DNA of 63,142 bases, counting the filler, from Octopus bimaculoides (Eukaryota), in NCBI RefSeq assembly GCF_001194135.2. It is 10 parts of 10 records of this genome, joined end to end, with 100 filler letters (N's around TTAATTAATTAA, not from the genome) between each part and the next. Parts side by side here need not be neighbours in the genome. Positions count along the whole stretch, not along the records: positions 42,577 to 49,607 come from NC_069008.1; 9 more parts are not named here. One strand, given 5' to 3'. Made by a program: the position numbers and the translations under genes. The notes below the pieces were generated by a model. It had not been told where the DNA came from. It worked only from the letters and a program-made list of their open reading frames with translations, and ran no database searches. Positions 14,361-49,607 of the stretch are shown piece after piece (position 1 is the first letter of the stretch; every line of letters starts with the position of its first letter).

Positions 14361-15203
14361 TATTGTCCTCTCCCCACCCCACCATCCATCCCCAAACGAC
14401 CCTCACTCAACCTACCACCCCACCACTTCCAGCACACTACATTCTCTTCATTCTGTTTCATTCCTCCATATTCTCCCATCCGGGATTCCCCTTAATTCAT
14501 GCCTCACTGACTCCCTACATAAACCTCTTTATATTCCTTTATTCTTTCTTTTTTTATTCCCTTATTCTTTTATTCCTCAACACGTTCCACTTATTGTATT
14601 TTTTTATATTTCTCCGCCCCACCCTCTCTATCACCCACTTTCACACTCTTATATTTATCTGTGTTTGTGTATGTGTTTTGCGTTTTTCAAATGTGTTTGC
14701 AGGCTCCCTAAGCATGCGTGTGCATATGTGTGTATGCATGTGTGTATGCGTGTGTATGTACGTGTATATGTGTGTATGTGTATGTGAGTGTGATCTTGTT
14801 TCATTTTCTACTTGACCTATTGCAAGTCTGACTACCTGATGTTTTAATCGGGTTGCAGAGACCAATGAAACTTGTGATGTTGTGACTCGGCAAAAGCTAA
14901 TACATATTATCCAAATAAGTAGAGCTTGTTTAATGTCGCAAAGAACTGAGGTTAAACGTTTCGGATAGTTCGTCTTGCGTCAGAGACATCAATGTAGAAA
15001 TATAATGAACAAGTGCGAAATTACGAACGACAACTGCAAATGGGTAACACCGCGATGGACTGGTTTTCCCATCTGGGGAAATAGTTGGTCTGCTCGCCTA
15101 GTCACTGGAGATGGCATCATTCGAAAGCTAAAAACAATGCGAAGTGCGTGGGCGACCAGCGATGTATAGCAACATCCGATGTATAAAAACATCCGATATC
15201 GTG

Positions 15204-41765: not shown

Positions 41766-42829
41766 AGCGGAACCATGTACGTGCAATCAATAAAGGCGTC
41801 TCTCTCCAAACTGTAGGAGGAGAGAAGGCAGACACATTCCACGAAATGGAGACGTGTCTTTCCAAAAGATACACCTTCTTTTTACATCACATGACTTCTT
41901 CCAAGATGTCGTCTGCTTTAGAAATATTCTTTTCCATTAACGCACTCCACCTCGCTCTTTCAATCTCTCGTTCTCTCTATCTCTTTCTTTCTGTGTGCCC
42001 GTGCCCGCGCGTGTGTGTGTGTTTATGTCATTCTCTCACGTTCAATCGGTCTCTAAGTTGATGTGTGTATGTGTGTATATATGCGCTTCTGTCTGCCTCA
42101 ATAATGATAGTATGCGACGTGCATAATATGCCTGTGTGTGTTCGCGTCCATATGTAATACTACGTGTGAAGTAATCTCTGTGTGTGGGTATGTGTTTGTG
42201 ATTGTGTGATGATATTCATGCAGCTATGAGCCTACAAGCTGCGTGTATTGTGTATGTATCTGCAGCTCGGTGCATATGTTGGCTATGAAATTACATGATG
42301 GAGCATGTGTGCATATGTGCGTATGTATCTAGGTACATACGTATGTAAGCGTGCATGTATATATGTACGTATGTGTGTGTGTGTGTGTATGTTTTTATGT
42401 ATGTATGTAAATATGAATTTATGCATATGTATGTTAGTATGTAAACCAATATCAATGAATTATGGATTAAATATTCNNNNNNNNNNNNNNNNNNNNNNNN
42501 NNNNNNNNNNNNNNNNNNNNTTAATTAATTAANNNNNNNNNNNNNNNNNNNNNNNNNNNNNNNNNNNNNNNNNNNNATCTCTATGACTTGGTCGCAATAT
42601 TGGATGTGATAAAACCTTTCGCTGAAACAATAACTCCAGGAGAAAATTTTCCCACCCCGTGTTATGCAAATACATAAATTATTTTTGGCTGCGAGTGATG
42701 CCATTGACTTGTAGGACTTACGCTTCGTTAGCTCCATAGTAGATCCGCCTTGTATGCTTGCTACGCATAAGTGAAGCGTTGTGTTTATCCATTTGCGTGT
42801 ATGTGCTTTTTATTCAACATTATCCCTTG

Positions 42830-43322
42830 TGCAGGTGGCACCACGTAAAATACACCATTTCGAGCGTGGCCGTTGCCAGTACCGCCTGACTGGCCTTCGT
42901 GCCAGTGGCACGTAAAAGCACCCACTACACTATCAGAGTGGTTGGCGTTAGGAAGGGCATCCAGTTGTAGAAACTCTGCCAAATCAGATTGGAGCCTGGT
43001 GTCATCTCTTGGTCCACCAGTCCTCAGTCAAATCGTCCAACCCATGCTAGCATGGAAAGCGGACATTAAATGATGATGATGATGATGATGATATATATAT
43101 ATAGTACCACCTGACTGGCCTTCATGCTGGTGACATGTAAAAGCACCCACTACACTCTCGGAATGGTTGGCATTAGGAAGGGCATCTAGCTGTAGAAACT
43201 GCCAAATCAGATTGGAGCCTGCTGTAGCCACCTGGTTCACCAGTCCTCAGTCAAATCGTCCAACCCATGCTAGCATGGAAAGCGGACGTTAAACGACAAT
43301 GATGATGATGATGATGATGATT
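42830..43322 (+). mobile_element. Two tandem 5'-truncated RTE-type 3' UTR copies (42830-43092, 43104-43322)
   Basis: Both contain GGCGTTAGGAAGGGCATC...CCAACCCATGCTAGCATGGAAAGCGGAC and end in (GAT)n. They are reverse-complementary to 46415-46650. Confidence 0.75.
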
Positions 43323-43534
43323 ATCACCCACTAAAGTTATAATCTTTAATTATGTTCTTAACATTGATTTTCGAGAGCTAGTTTGTTCCAGCTTAAAATA
43401 TTAAATTGAAATTAGGTGAAATGAAAGATAAGTCTATCATGTGGAACCAGGACAGCCCTCTTTTCTTCGAAGCATCTGTAACATGAAAGAAATAATAAAG
43501 ATGTCTGTTATTTTCTTCTTTCCGTCTTTTCCAG

Positions 43535-43745
43535 ATTAATCTTCTCCTGAAAGTATGTTCTGTCGCACAATGAAACTAATGGTGACTTTTTTGTTGATAC
43601 TGTATATGAGATTATTGTTGGAGGGTCATGCCGTTTCAGACTTCTGCACTAAATGCAGTTGTAGTGAGTCCCAGACCCAAATATCATGTGCATCTCTCAG
43701 CCTGATTACAGTTCCACCAGCCATTCCTGAAAATGTTGAATATTT
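43535..43745 (+). CDS. LRR gene, first coding exon (ATG at 43555): signal peptide + LRRNT cysteine cap
   Basis: Polypyrimidine tract + CCAG acceptor ending 43534. Encodes MFCRTMKLMVTFLLILYMRLLLEGHA (hydrophobic signal-like), then CTKCSCSESQTQISC..VPPAIPENVEYL (LRRNT, CxxCxC..C). Phase-2 donor TT|GTAAGT at 43745/43746. Confidence 0.9.
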
Positions 43746-43904
43746 GTAAGTGTTAAACAAATTTTACACCTTTTCCACAACCACTGATTTAAACTCTCAT
43801 TGGTTTTGCTAATACCTTATATTGCTGACCTCATCGCTAATACTAATAATACTTAATATTGTTAACCTCATCGCTTTAGACACTATATCACCTGCCGCAA
43901 AACC

Positions 43905-44220
43905 TTCTTCGTCCGTAGCAAATCGACGACCTCGTAAAAGATGTTTGAGCGGCCCCAAAAGGTGATAGTCGAAAGAGGTGAGATCTCTGTATGCAAGGTG
44001 TTCCGGAAACTCGAAAGTCAATAGTTCCTACAATGTGGGGGTGGCCATATGTGGCCGTGCATTTTCGTGCAACTACAACACTCGTTTTGACAATGGATTT
44101 CAGCGTTTGATGCAAATTGCTGATTTCAGTTTGTTGACCAGCATTTCAATGTAGCCTACTCAGGTGACTGTGGAGGCCTTTCCCAGGTAATGTTCCAGCA
44201 TGGGCTGCATTGCGAAAAAA
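43905..44220 (-). mobile_element. Mariner transposase C-terminal relic (intron of the LRR gene)
   Basis: Minus-strand PMLEHYL..YIEML..KLK..LHENARPH..EH LAY(SP)DL..DYHLLGPLKHLLRGRRF. Confidence 0.85.
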
Positions 44221-44276
44221 CGGTTAACATAAAATTTTCTGTGGATTTTGAGTTCTGAATTTCTTTTTTTTGTTGG

Positions 44277-44433
44277 CACAGGTGGGGGCTGTATGGTAAA
44301 AAGCTTGCTTCCACACCATATGGAGGCCAGTTCTAATCCTTGGGGAGTCGAGGATTCCGTTACTGAAGCTTCCACAGGTGGGGGCTGTATGGTAAAAAGC
44401 TTGCTTCCACACCATATGGAGGCCAGTTCTAAT
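44277..44433 (+). repeat. 96-bp tandem repeat resembling a SINE-B head, running into a gap
   Basis: CACAGGTGGGGGCTGTATGGTAAAAAGCTTGCTTCCACACCATATGG at 44277 and 44373. Confidence 0.75.
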
Positions 44434-45057
44434 NNNNNNNNNNNNNNNNNNNNNNNNNNNNNNNNNNNNNNNNNNNNNNNNNNNNNNNNNNNNNNNNNNN
44501 NNNNNNNNNNNNNNNNNNNNNNNNNNNNNNNNNNNNNNNNNNNNNNNNNNNNNNNNNNNNNNNNNNNNNNNNNNNNNNNNNNNNNNNNNNNNNNNNNNNN
44601 NNNNNNNNNNNNNNNNNNNNNNNNNNNNNNNNNNNNNNNNNNNNNNNNNNNNNNNNNNNNNNNNNNNNNNNNNNNNNNNNNNNNNNNNNNNNNNNNNNNN
44701 NNNNNNNNNNNNNNNNNNNNNNNNNNNNNNNNNNNNNNNNNNNNNNNNNNNNNNNNNNNNNNNNNNNNNNNNNNNNNNNNNNNNNNNNNNNNNNNNNNNN
44801 NNNNNNNNNNNNNNNNNNNNNNNNNNNNNNNNNNNNNNNNNNNNNNNNNNNNNNNNNNNNNNNNNNNNNNNNNNNNNNNNNNNNNNNNNNNNNNNNNNNN
44901 NNNNNNNNNNNNNNNNNNNNNNNNNNNNNNNNNNNNNNNNNNNNNNNNNNNNNNNNNNNNNNNTAATTAGCAAAATGTAAGATTTAACAACTCTGGAACA
45001 TAATTATCTGCATAATTATCAAACAAAAGTGATATTCTCAGAAGTACAGGCTCATAT

Positions 45058-45288
45058 TTCTTTATTGCCCACAAGGGGCTAAACATAGAGGGGACAAACA
45101 AGGACAGACAAAGTGATTAAGTCGATTACATCGACCCCAGTGCGTAACTGGTACTTAATTTATCGACCCCGAAAGGATGAAAGGCAAAGTTGACCTCGGC
45201 GGAATTTGAACTCAGAACATAAAGACAAACGAAATACCACTAAGCATTTCGGCCGGCATGCTAACGTTTCTGCCAGCTCGTCGCCCAT
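45058..45288 (-). mobile_element. SINE family A (LRR gene intron)
   Basis: Full minus-strand copy with the alternative tail AAGGGGCTAAACATAGAGGGGACAAAC. Confidence 0.85.
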
Positions 45289-45451
45289 AGAATATCCTAT
45301 TAATCTCAACCCTTATAAACATTTCTTATTTTCTAAAAATATCATTTCATTCAATAATTTATACGAAACATAATTGCCTACCCCTGATATTAAATGTATT
45401 ATCACAAATCTGATGCGTACAATATCTTATGAACTTAGTTTCATCTTACAG

Positions 45452-45523
45452 AAATTTGAAAAATAATAAAATCACAAATATTGGAGAACAAATCTTCCAG
45501 GACCTTACCGATTTAAAGAAATT
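45452..45523 (+). CDS. LRR gene, 72-bp LRR exon (L)NLKNNKITNIGEQIFQDLTDLKK(L)
   Basis: TTACAG acceptor, GTAAGT donor, 72 bp, phase 2-2, in frame with the previous exon, matches LxLxxNxIxxI..F..LxxLxxL. Confidence 0.93.
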
Positions 45524-45685
45524 GTAAGTCCGATCACTCTTGTTGGTGCTATTTTATTGACGATATAATATTAAATATTAACTGCCTCCCTTTCAATTCG
45601 TTCTGTTTTCTTTATGTGAGAATGTGTATGGAGGCATATATCTCTGTCTGAACAAAATTCAGTCTTAGTCCATCTACTCTTCACT

Positions 45686-45735
<50 letters not shown>

Positions 45736-46291
45736 GTTGTTTTTTTTCTTCTTTCTTCAAATCTTCTTCCATTTCTCGCCAAGTGTTTTCTGTACACCTA
45801 GGGCAGAGAAACTCGGTGTATGCATTCCCAGTTTACACACGCAAATTCACAGGTAAAACATGTATTTAAGAAAAAAAAAAAAATCAAATTCGTGAATGGA
45901 TGTTGTTTTCACAGCGATAATGCTCTTCTCAGTACATGAGTCGTTCCAGTTAGCACGATTTTTTGCACTTCCTGTTATTATTATTATTATTATTATAATA
46001 ATATTATTATCATTATTAATTCTTCTTCTTCTTCTTCAACATATATCCTTTTTCTCCACCTCATCATCATCCTTTTCACCTCCTACTCCAGCTCTTCCTC
46101 CTCCTCCTTTCCTTTCATTCCAGAGTCAATAAATGAGTACCAGTCTCACACTGGGTCCCCCAATGTAGTGGATTTGCCCCTGCCCCTGAATTGCTGTCCC
46201 TGTACCAAAATTTGAAACCAATATTTAATATTTTATCGCAAATCTGTTCTACACCCTTTTTTTTTAAAATATAAACTCATCTTTGTTACAG

Positions 46292-46363
46292 GGAACTGAG
46301 GAATAATGAAATCCAGGATATTGATGAACAAGCCTTCCGAAATCTTACCAATTTAAAGGAATT
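46292..46363 (+). CDS. LRR gene, 72-bp LRR exon (L)ELRNNEIQDIDEQAFRNLTNLKE(L)
   Basis: TTACAG acceptor, GTAAGC donor, 72 bp, phase 2-2, typical LRR consensus. Confidence 0.93.
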
Positions 46364-46414
46364 GTAAGCCGGATCACTCATGTTAATGCTATTTCATTGA
46401 CAATATACGTATGT

Positions 46415-46927
46415 ACTTCATCATCATCATTGTTTAACGTCCGCTTTCCATGCTAGCATGGGTTGGACGATTTGACTGAGGACTGATGAAACCAGACGGC
46501 TACACCAGGCTCCAATCTGATTTGCCAGAGTTTCTACAGCTGGATGCCCTTCCTAATGCCAACCACTCCGAGAGTGTAGTGGGTGCTTTTACGTGCCAGC
46601 GGCATGAGGGCCAGTCAGGCGGTACTGGCAACAGCCACGCTCAAAATGGTGTATTTTATGTGCCACATGCCTTGGAGTCAATCCAGCGGCACTGGCAACA
46701 ATCTCACTCGAATGTCTTTACACGTGCCACCGGCACAAGTGCCAGGAAGGCGACGCTGGGCACAGGTGCCATCACGATTTCGCTTTCACTTGCCTCAACA
46801 GGTCTTCGCAAGCCGAGTTTCGTGTCCAATGTAGAAAAGGTACGCATAAGTGGGCTGGCTACACCCCTGGCAGAGGCCTTGGATTTAGGTCTCACTTGGC
46901 TTGCCGGGTCTTCTCACGCACAGCATA
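46415..46927 (-). mobile_element. RTE-type LINE 3' end (ORF end + 3' UTR + (GAT)n tail), in LRR gene intron
   Basis: Minus strand encodes an ORF end YAVREKTRQAK*, then a UTR ending GCGGACGTTAAACAATGATGATGATG. The UTR is homologous to copies at 42.8-43.3 kb. Confidence 0.7.
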
Positions 46928-47481
46928 CAAATATTAAAAGTCTTCCTCGCCTTTTTTCCCTCTCCCCTATTTGCCTTGGCTCCCTATAAGTGTGTATGGT
47001 GGTGTAGCTCTCTCTACTACATTTACTCCTTGCCCCTCATCTTCACTCCGTCCCACAGTCTTATTGTCTCTCTTCTCTTACATATTCTCCCTTTCTATTC
47101 CCTCCTCTTCGAGATTTCTTTCTCTTCCTCCTTATAATCTTCGGCTTCTTCGACTACTACTACTACTACTACTACCACCACTACAACCATACTACTACTA
47201 CTACTGCCACTACTACTACTACCACCACTACTACTACTGCCACCACTACTACTACTGCCACTACTACTACTACTGCCACCACTACTACTACTGCCACTGC
47301 TACTATCACCTACTACTACTACTACTACCATCACTACTACTACTGCCACCACTACTACTACTGCCACTACTACTACTACTACCACTACCACCACTACTAC
47401 TACTGCCACCTTCACCTCTTTCGTTGACTTCACAACTCCAGCCCCAAAACAATTTCTTACAAACTCACTTTCTTTTCACAG

Positions 47482-47553
47482 AGATCTGAGTAAAAATGAA
47501 ATCAAAGAGATAGAAAAACGCACCTTTGAAGGCCTCGCCAATTTAGAGAAATT
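47482..47553 (+). CDS. LRR gene, 72-bp LRR exon (L)DLSKNEIKEIEKRTFEGLANLEK(L)
   Basis: TTCACAG acceptor, GTAAGT donor, 72 bp, phase 2-2, typical LRR consensus. Confidence 0.93.
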
Positions 47554-47759
47554 GTAAGTTCGTTTATTCTTGCTCATGCCATTTCATTAACCACATGTTT
47601 CCTCTCCTTCCTGCTTTAGCTCTGTGCATGTAGGTCCCTGCCTCTACTACATTCACTCCTTTCTGGGCGCGTATCATTACTCCATGTGACATAAACCACC
47701 AGCAGTTGATAGCCATTATTGCTCAGTTATTCTCAGACATTGCCACAAACTATATCAGA

Positions 47760-48495
47760 CTGTTGTTGTTGGCACTCCGTTGCTTAACGACGTCGAGGGT
47801 TCCAGTTGATCCGATCAACGGATGTGTACCCTTAACGTAGTTCTCGGAGATATTCAGTGTGACACAGAGTGTGACAAGGCTAACCCTTTGAATTACAGGC
47901 ACAACAGAAACAGGAAGAAAGAGTGAGAGAAAGTTGTGGTGAAAGAGTACAGCAGGGTTCGCCACCATCCCCTGCCGGAAAGCACTCCACCGGTTACGAC
48001 GTCGAGGGTTCCAGTTGATCCGATCAATGGAACAGCCTGCTCGTGAAATTAACATGCAAGTGGCTGAGCACTCCACAGACACGTGTACCCTTAACGTAGT
48101 TCTCGGGGATATTCAGCGTGACACAGTGTGACAAGGCTGACCCTTTGAATTACAGGCACAACAGAAACAGGAAGTAAGAGNNNNNNNNNNNNNNNNNNNN
48201 NNNNNNNNNNNNNNNNNNNNNNNNNNNNNNNNNNNNNNNNNNNNNNNNNNNNNNNNNNNNNNNNNNNNNNNNNNNNNNNNNNNNNNNNNNNNNNNNNNNN
48301 NNNNNNNNNNNNNNNNNNNNNNNNNNNNNNNNNNNNNNNNNNNNNNNNNNNNNNNNNNNNNNNNNNNNNNNNNNNNNNNNNNNNNNNNNNNNNNNNNNNN
48401 NNNNNNNNNNNNNNNNNNNNNNNNNNNNNNNNNNNNNNNNNNNNNNNNNNNNNNNNNNNNNCGCTGCCCTAACCACTGGGCCATTGCGCCTCCAC
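47760..48495 (-). mobile_element. SINE family C, partially tandem-duplicated, spanning a gap (LRR gene intron)
   Basis: GACGTCGAGGGTTCCAGTTGATCCGATCAA occurs twice (~47788, ~47998); head complement at 48463-48495. Confidence 0.8.
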
Positions 48496-48570
48496 GATAT
48501 CAAACTAAACATCAGGAAAACGAATAAATTCTTTCCTACATCAGACTATCAGTCCTGCCTTCCAGATAAA

Positions 48571-48634
<64 letters not shown>

Positions 48635-48924
48635 CAATGGTGTTTAAGAAATAATTTACCTAGCAAAAATTACAGGGAAATTATACAATACAATGACTGT
48701 GAAAATATTTAGTCACGAAGCCAGGAAATAGTTAACGGAATGTATGATCTGAAAATCTCTGACAAGATACATATCATTGACGGATATAATTGATACCTCC
48801 AAGAATACACACATGTATCCATCCATTAAAAATCCTCTTTATATTGATATTCATGGAAACAGCTTATTTTCTAAAGCTGTCACTTCGACATATTTTACGG
48901 GAATTGTAATTGTTTGCAAGGCAA

Positions 48925-49097
48925 AAACTATGGTGGCATTTAGTCAGTCTTTCGTTCAGCATTCAAATTCTGTGAAAGTCGATGTTACCTTTCGTCCTTT
49001 TGGGGGTTCATAAAATAGGTACCAGTTGGGCCCTTGGCTCAATGTAATCAACTTGCTCCTGCCCTGAAATTGCTGGCCTTGTTTCAAAATTTGAAAC
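48925..49097 (+). mobile_element. SINE family A, degenerate, directly followed by a family B SINE
   Basis: TTCAAATTC..CCTTTCGTCCTTTTGGGGG..ATAGGTACCAG..GCTGGCCTTG..CAAAATTTGAAAC. Confidence 0.65.
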
Positions 49098-49098
49098 T

Positions 49099-49510
49099 AG
49101 GCGTAGGAGTGGCTATGTAGTAAGTAGCTTGCTTACCAACCACATGGTTCTGGGTTCATTCCCGCAGCGTGGCACCTTGGGCAAGTGTCATCTACTATAG
49201 CCTTGGGCCGACCAAAGCCTTGTGAGTAGATTTGGTAGATGGAAACTGAAAGAGGCCCGTCGTATATATGTATGTGTGTGTATATGTTTGTGTGTCTGTA
49301 TTTGTCTCCCCAACATCGCTTGTCAATCGATTCTGGTGTGTTTACTTCCCCGTCACTTAGCGGTTCGGCAACAAGAGACCGATAGAATAAGTACTAGGCT
49401 TACAAAGAATAAGTCCTGGGGGTCAATTTGATTCAACTAAAAAGCGGTGCTCCAGCATGGCCGCAGTCAAATGACTGAAACAAGTAAAAGAGTGAAAGAG
49501 AGCAAAAGAG
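49099..49510 (+). mobile_element. SINE family B, full length (LRR gene intron)
   Basis: Colinear with 37312-37725. Confidence 0.85.
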
Positions 49511-49573
49511 AGTAGTGTTTTATCACAATCCTAACTTTATACACTTTTTTTTAAACCCGTTTTTATGTTACAG

Positions 49574-49607
49574 GGATCTGAGGAACAATGAAATCCAGAG
49601 AATTGAT
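49574..49607 (+). CDS. LRR gene, partial LRR exon (L)DLRNNEIQRID..., truncated by assembly gap
   Basis: TTACAG acceptor; 29/34 nt identical to the start of the 46292 exon; N gap begins at 49608. Confidence 0.88.

What the first reader, a model, noticed from the sequence alone, without database searches (positions are those of the whole stretch)
45395..49607. LRR exons are duplicated cassettes whose intron flanks are more conserved than the exons
Seen: the 44 nt after the donors of the 45452 and 46292 exons are 37/44 identical (84%), while the exons are 51/72 identical (71%). The 47482 exon's downstream intron matches the 45452 one at 28/38. A TTATCRCAAATCT-like motif lies 53-59 nt upstream of three acceptors (45399, 46233, 49520). 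Beyond these ~60-nt and ~45-nt flanks the introns contain largely unrelated TEs. Inference: the ectodomain grew by repeated copying of a ~180-bp intron-exon-intron cassette, and the flanks may be kept by selection as splicing elements (selector/docking-like) or by gene conversion. This could be a modular, variable LRR receptor system.
Basis: partly seen in the sequence, partly recalled or inferred. Interest (0 to 1): 0.8.

Follow-up and report, generated by a model that had tools for sequence, protein, structure and literature searches.

The report
Duplicated LRR exons with neutral intron remnants
An octopus gene for a secreted or membrane leucine-rich-repeat protein grew by tandem copying of a ~180-bp "exon plus short intron" unit, and the similar intron edges are neutrally decaying leftovers of that short intron, not conserved splicing signals, so this is an ordinary case of a well-known way of building repeat proteins.

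Summary
Exons at 45452, 46292 and 47482 are 72 nt, phase 2 at both ends, and each encodes one LRR. The 44 nt after the E2 and E3 donors are 37/44 identical against 51/72 for the exons. TTATCRCAAATCT lies 53, 59 and 54 nt before three acceptors. "Flanks more conserved than exons" is not significant (p=0.12 for the best pair, >0.8 for the others).

Substitution identity is 88.7% in exons, 89.7% in flanks and 89.8% in deep intron. Both O. sinensis haplotigs have also lost 30 of the 44 nt of the E2 downstream flank. No consistent docking/selector-type complementarity exists. Paralogues have not homogenised since the species split.

The two flanks are best read as the two halves of an ancestral ~105-130-nt intron, later split by TE and microsatellite insertions. 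The extra E2-E3 similarity is an old mosaic tract running from mid-exon into the intron, from unequal crossover or gene conversion.

Both assembly gaps lie in introns. E4 to E5 stays in frame, but a hidden exon in gap 2 cannot be excluded.

Verdict: cassette duplication is supported and selected flanks are refuted. It is a new member of a known kind, of low interest.

The parts
43555..43745 (+). Exon 1 coding part. ATG at 43570, with an in-frame upstream ATG at 43555. Encodes a signal peptide plus a Cys-rich LRR N-terminal cap. Phase-2 donor TT|GTAAGT. Its downstream intron is NOT homologous to the cassette flanks.
   Evidence: 13-14/44 identity to the cassette flanks. Orthologue is 154/176 identical. 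The O. sinensis model starts MFRRTMKLM.
45452..45523 (+). LRR exon E2: 72 nt, phase 2-2, encodes (L)NLKNNKITNIGEQIFQDLTDLKK
   Evidence: Orthologue L001 12526-12597, 66/72 identical.
46292..46363 (+). LRR exon E3: 72 nt, phase 2-2. Mosaic: its 5' half is closest to E5 and its 3' half is closest to E2.
   Evidence: Orthologue L001 13509-13580, 64/72 identical.
47482..47553 (+). LRR exon E4: 72 nt, phase 2-2. The most diverged cassette, 49/72 to both E2 and E3.
49574..49607 (+). LRR exon E5. Only the first 34 nt are present because the piece ends here. 29/34 identical to E3.
45524..45567 (+). Downstream flank of E2, the 5' half of the ancestral short intron. Nt 45531-45560 are deleted in O. sinensis between CGAT direct repeats.
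46364..46407 (+). Downstream flank of E3. 37/44 identical to the E2 flank and 41/44 to its O. sinensis orthologue. A SINE-like insertion starts at 46418.
47554..47591 (+). Downstream flank of E4. 30-31/44 identical to the E2 and E3 flanks.
45386..45451 (+). Upstream flank of E2, the 3' half of the ancestral intron. Contains the motif TTATCACAAATCT at 45399-45411.
46217..46291 (+). Upstream flank of E3. Contains the motif TTATCGCAAATCT at 46233-46245. Abuts the tail of a repeat at 46161-46218.
47416..47481 (+). Upstream flank of E4. Starts with CTCTTTCGTTGAC (47416-47428), a copy of the downstream-flank tail, joined directly to a degenerate motif TTCACAACTCC.
49517..49573 (+). Upstream flank of E5. 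Contains the motif TTATCACAATCCT at 49520-49532. Abuts a SINE-like repeat at 49098-49500.
45344..45356 (+). ATTTCATTCAATA, a remnant of the downstream-flank tail (ATTTCATTGACAATA) about 100 nt upstream of E2. It suggests that a whole ancestral intron copy precedes E2.
   Evidence: 3.2% of shuffles reach the score
46418..46662 (-). SINE-like repeat inserted in intron 3. Same family as 42842-43085 and 43103-43315.
   Evidence: 90-91% identity; copies in L001
47145..47405 (+). CTA-rich micro/minisatellite in intron 3. It is orthologous in O. sinensis, and both O. sinensis contigs end about 55 nt past its orthologue.
47772..48180 (+). Two copies of a local repeat in intron 4 (47772-47923 and 47982-48180). 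The second copy runs into the assembly gap.
48181..48461 (.). Assembly gap 2, inside intron 4. Splicing E4 to E5 keeps the frame. Contents are unknown.
44434..44963 (.). Assembly gap 1, inside intron 1. The complete O. sinensis intron 1 has no LRR exon.

Best explanation
This is the 5' part of an Octopus gene for an extracellular LRR protein. It has a signal peptide, an LRRNT cap, then one LRR per 72-nt phase-2 exon.

**How the LRR region formed (inferred).** It expanded by tandem duplication, through unequal crossover, of a unit of roughly 180-200 bp: one exon plus one short intron of about 105-130 nt. The '45-nt downstream flank' and the '60-nt upstream flank' are simply the two halves of that ancestral short intron. 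SINE-like elements and microsatellites later inserted into its AT-rich middle, which pushed the halves apart and left unrelated sequence between them.

**How the flanks evolve (shown).** They evolve at the neutral rate. They look about as similar as the exons only because the duplications are fairly young. Flank JC distances are 0.18-0.41, against 0.11 for the species split.

**The one place where the flank looks better kept than the exon (E2 against E3).** This is a mosaic effect. A younger shared tract runs from about exon nt 35 through the 44-nt downstream flank and is 82% identical. The 5' third of E3 has a different, older relationship to E2 (62%) and is closest to E5 (85%). This pattern is what unequal crossover or gene conversion with a breakpoint inside the exon produces. 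It predates the split from O. sinensis.

**Status of each step.** Shown: the exon structure, the cassette homology, neutral flank evolution, the deletion of a flank, and the lack of concerted evolution since the split. Inferred: the contiguous ancestral intron and the mid-exon breakpoint.
For: **Exon structure and reading frame**
-.

**Cassette homology covers exon plus both flanks**
-.

**Orthologue comparison**
- Identity is 284/320 in exons, 226/252 in flanks and 581/647 in deep intron.
- Fisher flank against deep intron gives p=1.0.
- The 95% CI of flank divergence is 6.9-14.8%, against 8.0-12.8% for deep intron.

**Indels in the flanks**
- A 30-nt deletion of the E2 downstream flank is present in both O. 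sinensis contigs.
- The E3 upstream flank has 9-nt and 2-nt indels.
- Each orthologous TTATCRCAAATCT motif carries one substitution.

**Ancestral short intron**
- The downstream-flank tail recurs immediately 5' of the E4 and E2 upstream flanks.
- An AT-rich 13-mer is shared by the end of the E2 downstream flank and the start of the E3 upstream flank (0.6-3% of shuffles reach these scores).
- Material between the flanks is multi-copy repeat or microsatellite.

**Mosaic**
- E2-E3 is 21/34 over exon nt 1-34 against 67/82 over nt 35-72 plus flank, p=0.03.
- The E3 5' half is 28/33 to E5.
- The same pattern appears in O. sinensis, 22/34 against 32/38.
- Between orthologues the 5' exon halves are not fast-evolving: 63/68 against 67/76 for the 3' halves.

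**No concerted evolution since the split**
-.

**Coding sequence under purifying selection**
- dN 0.082, dS 0.30.
Against: - The sample is small: four and a half cassettes in one species, two in the other, and 252 flank sites. A mild constraint on the flanks, up to about a 30% rate reduction, cannot be excluded.
- The mosaic tests are each only p of about 0.03-0.05 and were chosen after looking at the data.
- The upstream flanks do not follow the E3-E5 grouping. E3-E5 is 26/40 and 18/22; E2-E3 is 27/40 and 17/22.
- The evidence for a contiguous ancestral intron rests on 13-15-nt matches in AT-rich sequence.
- No transcript data were available, so exon usage is unknown.
- The rest of the gene and the content of gap 2 are unseen.
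Confidence: 0.78

Rival explanations
1. The flanks are functional splicing elements (intronic enhancers, or docking/selector-type pairing sites) kept by purifying selection. They would allow regulated or mutually exclusive use of the LRR exons.
For: - The TTATCRCAAATCT motif sits at a fixed distance from three acceptors and nowhere else in the piece.
- All exons are symmetric phase 2-2, so skipping any of them keeps the frame.
- One cognate pair (E2 downstream with E3 upstream) can form a duplex of -21 kcal/mol, z=-3.4.
Against: - Flank divergence between species equals deep-intron divergence.
- 30 of the 44 nt of the E2 downstream flank are deleted in both O. sinensis haplotigs, while the annotated model still joins E2 to E3.
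- The motif has a substitution in each O. sinensis copy and is degenerate at E4.
- The other three cognate flank pairs show no complementarity (z=+0.96, -0.42, +0.18). The one hit is an AT palindrome, AATATTAAATATT.
- Consecutive LRRs of a solenoid are not interchangeable alternatives in the way Dscam exon variants are.
Confidence: 0.05
2. The flanks are neutral, but the exons diverged faster than neutral after duplication because of diversifying selection on the ligand-binding (concave) face. That would make the exons less similar than the introns.
For: - E2 and E3 differ mostly in exon nt 1-34, which encode LxLxxNxIxxI.
- By my own codon-by-codon reading of the sequences, about 11 of the 13 differences there are non-synonymous. 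They fall on the variable x positions, several codons have 2-3 changes, and the scaffold L/N/I residues are identical.
- Neutral flank divergence of the same pair is only 16%.
Against: - Between orthologues the same 5' halves are the best-conserved part (63/68 identical). Only one of the six LRR amino-acid replacements lies on the concave-face positions.
- Orthologue dN/dS for E2+E3 is 0.057/0.30.
- The E3 5' half is 85% identical to E5, so it is not generally hyper-diverged. That fits different ancestry better than acceleration.
- Paralogue dN (0.30-0.38) is below dS (0.6-0.8).
Confidence: 0.12
3. Ongoing gene conversion between cassettes keeps homogenising the flanks and parts of the exons (concerted evolution).
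For: Similarity between cassettes is patchy, which is the footprint expected of conversion tracts.
Against: - Orthologous cassettes are far closer (66/72 and 64/72; flanks 41/44) than paralogous ones within either species (51/72 and 54/72).
- Within-species paralogue identities equal the cross-species ones (52/72 and 55/72). No exchange is therefore detectable since the split.
- The lineage-specific 30-nt deletion has not been repaired from E3.
Confidence: 0.05

Closest known systems
One-LRR-per-exon genes of animals (gonadotropin/LH receptor, LGR4-6, Slit)
   Same: - Each LRR is encoded by its own exon of about 72 nt, and all introns are in phase 2. This has long been read as growth from a prototype exon by duplication. 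PMC11378527 cites Koo 1991 and Kobe & Deisenhofer 1994 for the LH receptor. The Slit and LGR exon structure is from my own knowledge.
- The N-terminal 142 aa hit LGR4/5 ectodomains among many other LRR proteins.
   Different: - In those genes the duplications are ancient and no intron homology remains. Here they are recent enough that the whole short intron is still recognisable.
- Membership in LGR or Slit cannot be tested, because the 7TM or EGF parts would lie outside the piece.
- The best PDB hits are generic: IGFALS, LRRC15, TLR3, LRIG1.
Brown-alga ROCO LRR exon shuffling (Zambounis et al. 2012, PMC3341825; Teng et al. 2024, PMC11378527)
   Same: 72-nt phase-2 exons, one LRR each, in tandem and recently duplicated. 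These were proposed to be a modular, variable receptor repertoire with alternative splicing.
   Different: - Those are cytoplasmic LRR-ROC-COR proteins in stramenopiles.
- Their introns hold inactivated and reverse-strand LRR exons, and positive selection was reported on the concave face.
- Here there is a signal peptide and an LRRNT, no intronic pseudo-exons were found, and no sign of positive selection between orthologues.
Dscam1 exon clusters with docking and selector sites
   Same: Tandemly duplicated exons with short, similar intronic sequences next to them.
   Different: - Dscam's intronic elements are complementary to a docking site, conserved far beyond neutral expectation, and enforce mutually exclusive choice among alternative versions of the same half-domain (my own knowledge).
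- Here no consistent complementarity exists, conservation is neutral, and the annotated orthologue uses E2 and E3 together.
RefSeq 'leucine-rich repeat and transmembrane domain-containing protein 2-like' of Octopus sinensis (XP_029654284.2, XP_029654285.2)
   Same: It is the orthologue. Identity is 82% over E1-E3, with the same exon borders and introns alignable at about 90% substitution identity.
   Different: - It is a 112-aa model truncated by the contig end. The name comes from automated similarity and says nothing secure about the full architecture.
- The two accessions are 99.3%-identical haplotigs.

Membership tests
Exon-per-repeat LRR gene built by tandem exon duplication | Each LRR is encoded by one exon of about 72 nt | tested here: met
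   E2, E3 and E4 are exactly 72 nt and each translates to one 24-residue LxxLxLxxNxIxxI...F..L..L repeat. Pfam LRR_8 E=6e-35.
Exon-per-repeat LRR gene built by tandem exon duplication | All repeat introns are in the same phase (symmetric exons) | tested here: met
   Every donor is TT|GTAAG and every acceptor is followed by the third base of a Leu codon, so the phase is 2-2. The spliced frame is open across E1-E5.
Exon-per-repeat LRR gene built by tandem exon duplication | Repeat units are homologous at the DNA level beyond what the protein motif requires | tested here: met
   Homology extends about 45 nt 3' and 60-70 nt 5' into the introns, at 68-84%.
Dscam-type docking/selector mutually exclusive splicing | Intronic selector next to each variable exon is complementary to a docking site | tested here: not met
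   Duplex energies of all 16 downstream-by-upstream flank pairs were compared with shuffles. Only one pair stands out, and it is an AT palindrome. Cognate pairs give z=+0.96, -3.4, -0.4 and +0.2.
Dscam-type docking/selector mutually exclusive splicing | Intronic elements are conserved between species above the neutral intron level | tested here: not met
   Flanks 89.7% against deep intron 89.8%. A 30-nt deletion removes one flank in O. sinensis.
Dscam-type docking/selector mutually exclusive splicing | Only one exon of the cluster is present per transcript | not testable with these tools
   No RNA data. The RefSeq model P0001 contains E2 and E3 in series, which argues against it, but this is a prediction.
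Brown-alga ROCO-type LRR exon shuffling | Inactivated or reverse-strand LRR exons lie in the introns of the LRR region | tested here: not met
   tblastn of all LRR exons against both strands of the piece and of L001 finds only E1-E5 and E1-E3.
Brown-alga ROCO-type LRR exon shuffling | Positive selection on concave-face residues | tested here: inconclusive
   Orthologue dN/dS is 0.19-0.27, and one of six LRR replacements lies on the concave face. There are far too few sites for a site model.
Lamprey VLR-type somatic LRR cassette assembly | Germline cassettes lack splice sites and are copied into an incomplete gene | tested here: not met
   All cassettes here have canonical AG/GTAAG borders and lie in order on one strand within a spliceable gene.
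LGR / LRTM2 / Slit (specific protein families) | C-terminal architecture: 7TM, or a single TM after LRRCT, or EGF/LamG | not testable with these tools
   The piece ends in E5, and both O. sinensis contigs end before E4. The N-terminal part matches many LRR families equally.

The most novel reading that the evidence does not exclude
The cassette array is still dynamic at the population level or is used combinatorially. Symmetric phase-2 LRR exons would be skipped or exchanged to give ectodomains of variable length and specificity, making this a cephalopod counterpart of the brown-alga ROCO idea. The mid-exon mosaic would then be the trace of recurrent cassette exchange. My evidence shows no exchange since the species split and no constraint on the flanks. 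It contains no transcript or population data and covers only the first five exons.
Probability: 0.05. Interest if true: 0.55.

Novelty: new member of a known kind. Interest (0 to 1): 0.15.

Why it matters
Little rides on it. It is a clean, fairly young example of how LRR solenoids grow by tandem duplication of an exon plus its short intron. It also shows how later TE insertion can make the intron edges look like conserved 'flanks'. It is useful as a caution: similarity of intron edges between paralogous exons is not evidence of function until it is compared with an orthologous neutral baseline. If the whole array were sequenced in several octopods, it could serve as a small model for dating unequal-crossover events in repeat proteins.

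Tried and rejected
1. **Paralogues.** The word-indexed protein search returned only the O. sinensis orthologue (1 of 49 candidates passed). The exhaustive representative search returned 106,348 generic LRR proteins, ranked by repeat number and at most about 43% identical. It was useless for finding close paralogues or naming the family.
2. **Extending the O. sinensis orthologue past E3.** Both contigs (L001, L002) end about 55 nt past the CTA microsatellite, in the upstream flank of E4. They are haplotigs of each other.
3. **Structured RNA or tRNA in the flanks or introns.** Rfam at E up to 1 and ARAGORN found nothing.
4. **Docking/selector pairing.** Rejected.
5. **Hidden or decayed LRR exons in the introns.** None found in readable sequence.
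6. **Resolving gap 2 through another copy of the flanking repeat.** L001 has no copy of the 47772-48180 repeat.
7. **Naming a specific protein family from Pfam or PDB.** Only generic LRR matches were found.

Full report
**1. What is in the piece**

Reading 42577-49607 and splicing the obvious exons gives an open frame.
- E1 CDS is 43570-43745, with an in-frame upstream ATG at 43555. It encodes a hydrophobic signal peptide and a Cys-rich cap (DFCTKCSCSESQTQISCASLSLITVPPAIPENVEYL).
- E2 is 45452-45523, E3 is 46292-46363 and E4 is 47482-47553. E5 starts at 49574 and is cut by the piece edge at 49607.
- E2, E3 and E4 are each exactly 72 nt, bounded by YAG| and |GTAAG, and phase 2 on both sides. 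The split codon is always Leu, TT|R. Each encodes one 24-residue LRR.
- Pfam sees only LRR families (LRR_8, E=6e-35).
- The PDB hits are generic extracellular LRR proteins: IGFALS, LRRC15, TLR3, LRIG1, LGR4/5, LRRTM.
- An exhaustive profile-free search gives over 100,000 LRR proteins and nothing close.

**2. The gaps (tested first, as asked)**

There are two N runs, 44434-44963 and 48181-48461. Both lie in introns.
- Gap 2 is in intron 4. The E4 donor and E5 acceptor are both phase 2, so E4|E5 stays in frame (...ANLEKL|DLRNNEIQRID).
- The left edge of gap 2 is the second copy of a local repeat (47772-47923 and 47982-48180). By eye, the right edge looks like a SINE head.
- No orthologous sequence covers gap 2, so contiguity and the absence of a hidden 72-nt exon cannot be shown. 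None of the conclusions below depend on it.
- Gap 1 (intron 1) is covered by the gap-free O. sinensis intron 1, which contains no LRR exon.

**3. The observation**

- E2/E3 downstream 44 nt are 37/44 identical; the exons are 51/72.
- E2/E4 flank is 31/44 and E3/E4 flank is 30/44; the exons are 49/72 in both pairs.
- The E1 donor flank is unrelated (13-14/44).
- TTATCRCAAATCT is found only at 45399, 46233 and 49520 (up to 2 mismatches, both strands), 53, 59 and 54 nt before acceptors. Shuffles give 0.5 hits.
- Self-BLAST recovers the cassettes at 70-88% identity and shows that the sequence between the flanks belongs to unrelated multi-copy repeats and microsatellites.

The headline 'flanks more conserved than exons' is not statistically supported.
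- Best pair: p=0.12, or p=0.25 once the obligatory GTAAG is set aside.
- The other two pairs: p above 0.8.
- Both E2/E3 flanks pooled: p=0.49.

**4. The decisive test: an orthologue**

The only database relative is a truncated Octopus sinensis RefSeq model (P0001, XP_029654284.2, 'LRTM2-like', 82% identity).
- Its contig (L001) carries E1, E2 and E3. Its introns align with the window's throughout.
- A second contig (L002) is a 99.3%-identical haplotig.

Substitution identity by partition:

| Partition | Identical / aligned | Identity |
|---|---|---|
| Exons | 284/320 | 88.7% |
| Flanks (44 nt down + 60 nt up) | 226/252 | 89.7% |
| Deep unique intron | 581/647 | 89.8% |

- Fisher flank against deep intron gives p=1.0.
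- The flanks are not indel-poor either.
  - Both O. sinensis haplotigs lack 30 of the 44 nt of the E2 downstream flank. This is the window's 45531-45560, lost between CGAT direct repeats.
  - The E3 upstream flank has 9-nt and 2-nt indels.
- Each orthologous copy of the 13-nt motif has one substitution.

With 252 sites, a mild constraint (under about 30% rate reduction) cannot be excluded (CI).

**5.

*Docking/selector pairing.*
- Among 16 downstream-by-upstream flank combinations only one beats shuffles: E2 downstream with E3 upstream, z=-3.4.
- That hit is the AT palindrome AATATTAAATATT.
- The other cognate pairs give z=+0.96, -0.42 and +0.18.
- No Rfam family or tRNA was found.

*Gene conversion.*
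- Orthologous exons are 66/72 and 64/72 identical.
- Paralogues within a species are 51/72 and 54/72, the same as across species (52/72 and 55/72).
- So there is no concerted evolution since the split.

*Selection on the protein.*
- Orthologue dN=0.082 and dS=0.30, which is ordinary purifying selection.
- The exon halves encoding the concave face are the best-conserved part between species (63/68).

**6. What the flanks are**

- The tail of the downstream flank (CTATTTCATTGAC) recurs directly 5' of the E4 upstream flank (47416-47428, joined to a degenerate TTCACAACTCC motif). It recurs again about 100 nt upstream of E2 (45344-45356).
- The end of the E2 downstream flank and the start of the E3 upstream flank share AATATT(A/T)AATATT. 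Each of these matches is reached by 0.6-3% of shuffles.
- I infer that downstream flank plus upstream flank together are the whole ancestral intron of about 105-130 nt. The duplicated unit was exon plus short intron, about 180-200 bp.
- TEs and microsatellites later inserted in the AT-rich middle. Those insertions are shared with O. sinensis, so they predate the split.
- Flank JC distances between cassettes are 0.18-0.41, against 0.11 between species. This places the duplications at roughly 1.6-4 times the age of the species split.

**7. Why E2/E3 looked special**

The similarity is mosaic.
- E2-E3 is 21/34 in exon nt 1-34, but 67/82 from nt 35 through the downstream flank (p=0.03). O. sinensis shows the same pattern, 22/34 against 32/38.
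- The E3 5' part is 28/33 to E5.
- That 5' part is not fast-evolving between orthologues. A different ancestry, from unequal crossover or a conversion tract with a breakpoint inside the exon, explains it better than diversifying selection.
- This is suggestive, not proven. The tests are post hoc and the upstream flanks do not follow the E3-E5 grouping.

**8. Comparison with what is known**

- One LRR per 72-nt phase-2 exon, attributed to exon duplication, is described for the LH receptor. In strikingly similar form it is described for brown-alga ROCO genes, where shuffling, intronic pseudo-exons, positive selection and alternative splicing were reported (PMC3341825, PMC11378527).
- Slit and LGR4-6 share the layout (my own knowledge).
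- The octopus gene shares the exon architecture. It lacks intronic pseudo-exons and signs of positive selection.
- It fails the testable Dscam-type criteria, and it is clearly not VLR-like because it has canonical splice sites.
- Its specific family cannot be assigned from the N-terminal part.

**9. Verdict**

- Observation: partly confirmed. The counts and the motif are real; 'more conserved than exons' is not significant.
- Interpretation: cassette duplication is supported. Functional flanks are refuted within the power of the data. Current gene conversion is refuted, though an old exchange is likely. The idea of a variable receptor system is unsupported but untested at the RNA level.
- This is a new member of a known kind, of low interest.

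Noticed in passing
window 44277-44337 and 44373-44433: A 61-nt stretch is repeated at 100% identity, and the second copy ends exactly at assembly gap 1. O. sinensis has a single copy (L001 about 11473-11519 matches both). This is probably an assembly artefact at the gap edge rather than a real duplication.
   Followed up: partly
window 42842-43085, 43103-43315 (+) and 46418-46662 (-): Three copies of one SINE-like repeat, 88-91% identical, each ending in an (ATG)n/(ATC)n microsatellite. Two lie in tandem upstream of the gene and one is inverted in intron 3. The family is also present in L001.
   Followed up: partly
window 43555-43569: An in-frame ATG lies 15 nt upstream of the ATG I used (MFCRT-MKLM...). 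The O. sinensis RefSeq model starts at the equivalent upstream ATG (MFRRTMKLM), so the true start may be 43555.
   Followed up: partly
coding exons E1-E3, window against L001: Synonymous divergence (13 single synonymous changes over about 66 sites; NG86 dS 0.30) is higher than divergence of the adjacent introns (10.2%). Fisher gives p=0.036. The sample is small. This could be chance, or the AT-rich introns may mutate more slowly than codon third positions.
   Followed up: partly
L001 13497-13508 (O. sinensis E3 acceptor): The O. sinensis E3 acceptor reads ...ATGTTAAAG|A where the window has ...TGTTACAG|G. That is a weaker AAG acceptor in both haplotigs, yet the RefSeq model uses it.
   Followed up: no
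L001 and L002 ends (about 14677-14994); window 47145-47405: Both O. sinensis haplotig contigs stop at the same point, about 55 nt past the orthologue of the long CTA-rich minisatellite of intron 3, inside the upstream flank of E4. The window's array has an 18-nt-like CTACTACTACTGCCACCA periodicity. The repeat probably broke that assembly and truncated the RefSeq protein to 112 aa.
   Followed up: partly
window 45054-45285: A 230-nt repeat in intron 1 has at least four copies at 91-94% identity within 4 kb of the O. sinensis locus (L001 8014, 8952, 10868(-), 11100(-)). It is a locally abundant element family and part of the TE load of this region.
   Followed up: no
window 45691-45735, 45970-46020, 48571-48633: Long (TTA)n microsatellites lie in introns 2 and 4. 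At the first site O. sinensis has (TTC)n where the window has (TTA)n, so the microsatellite motif has turned over at an orthologous position.
   Followed up: no
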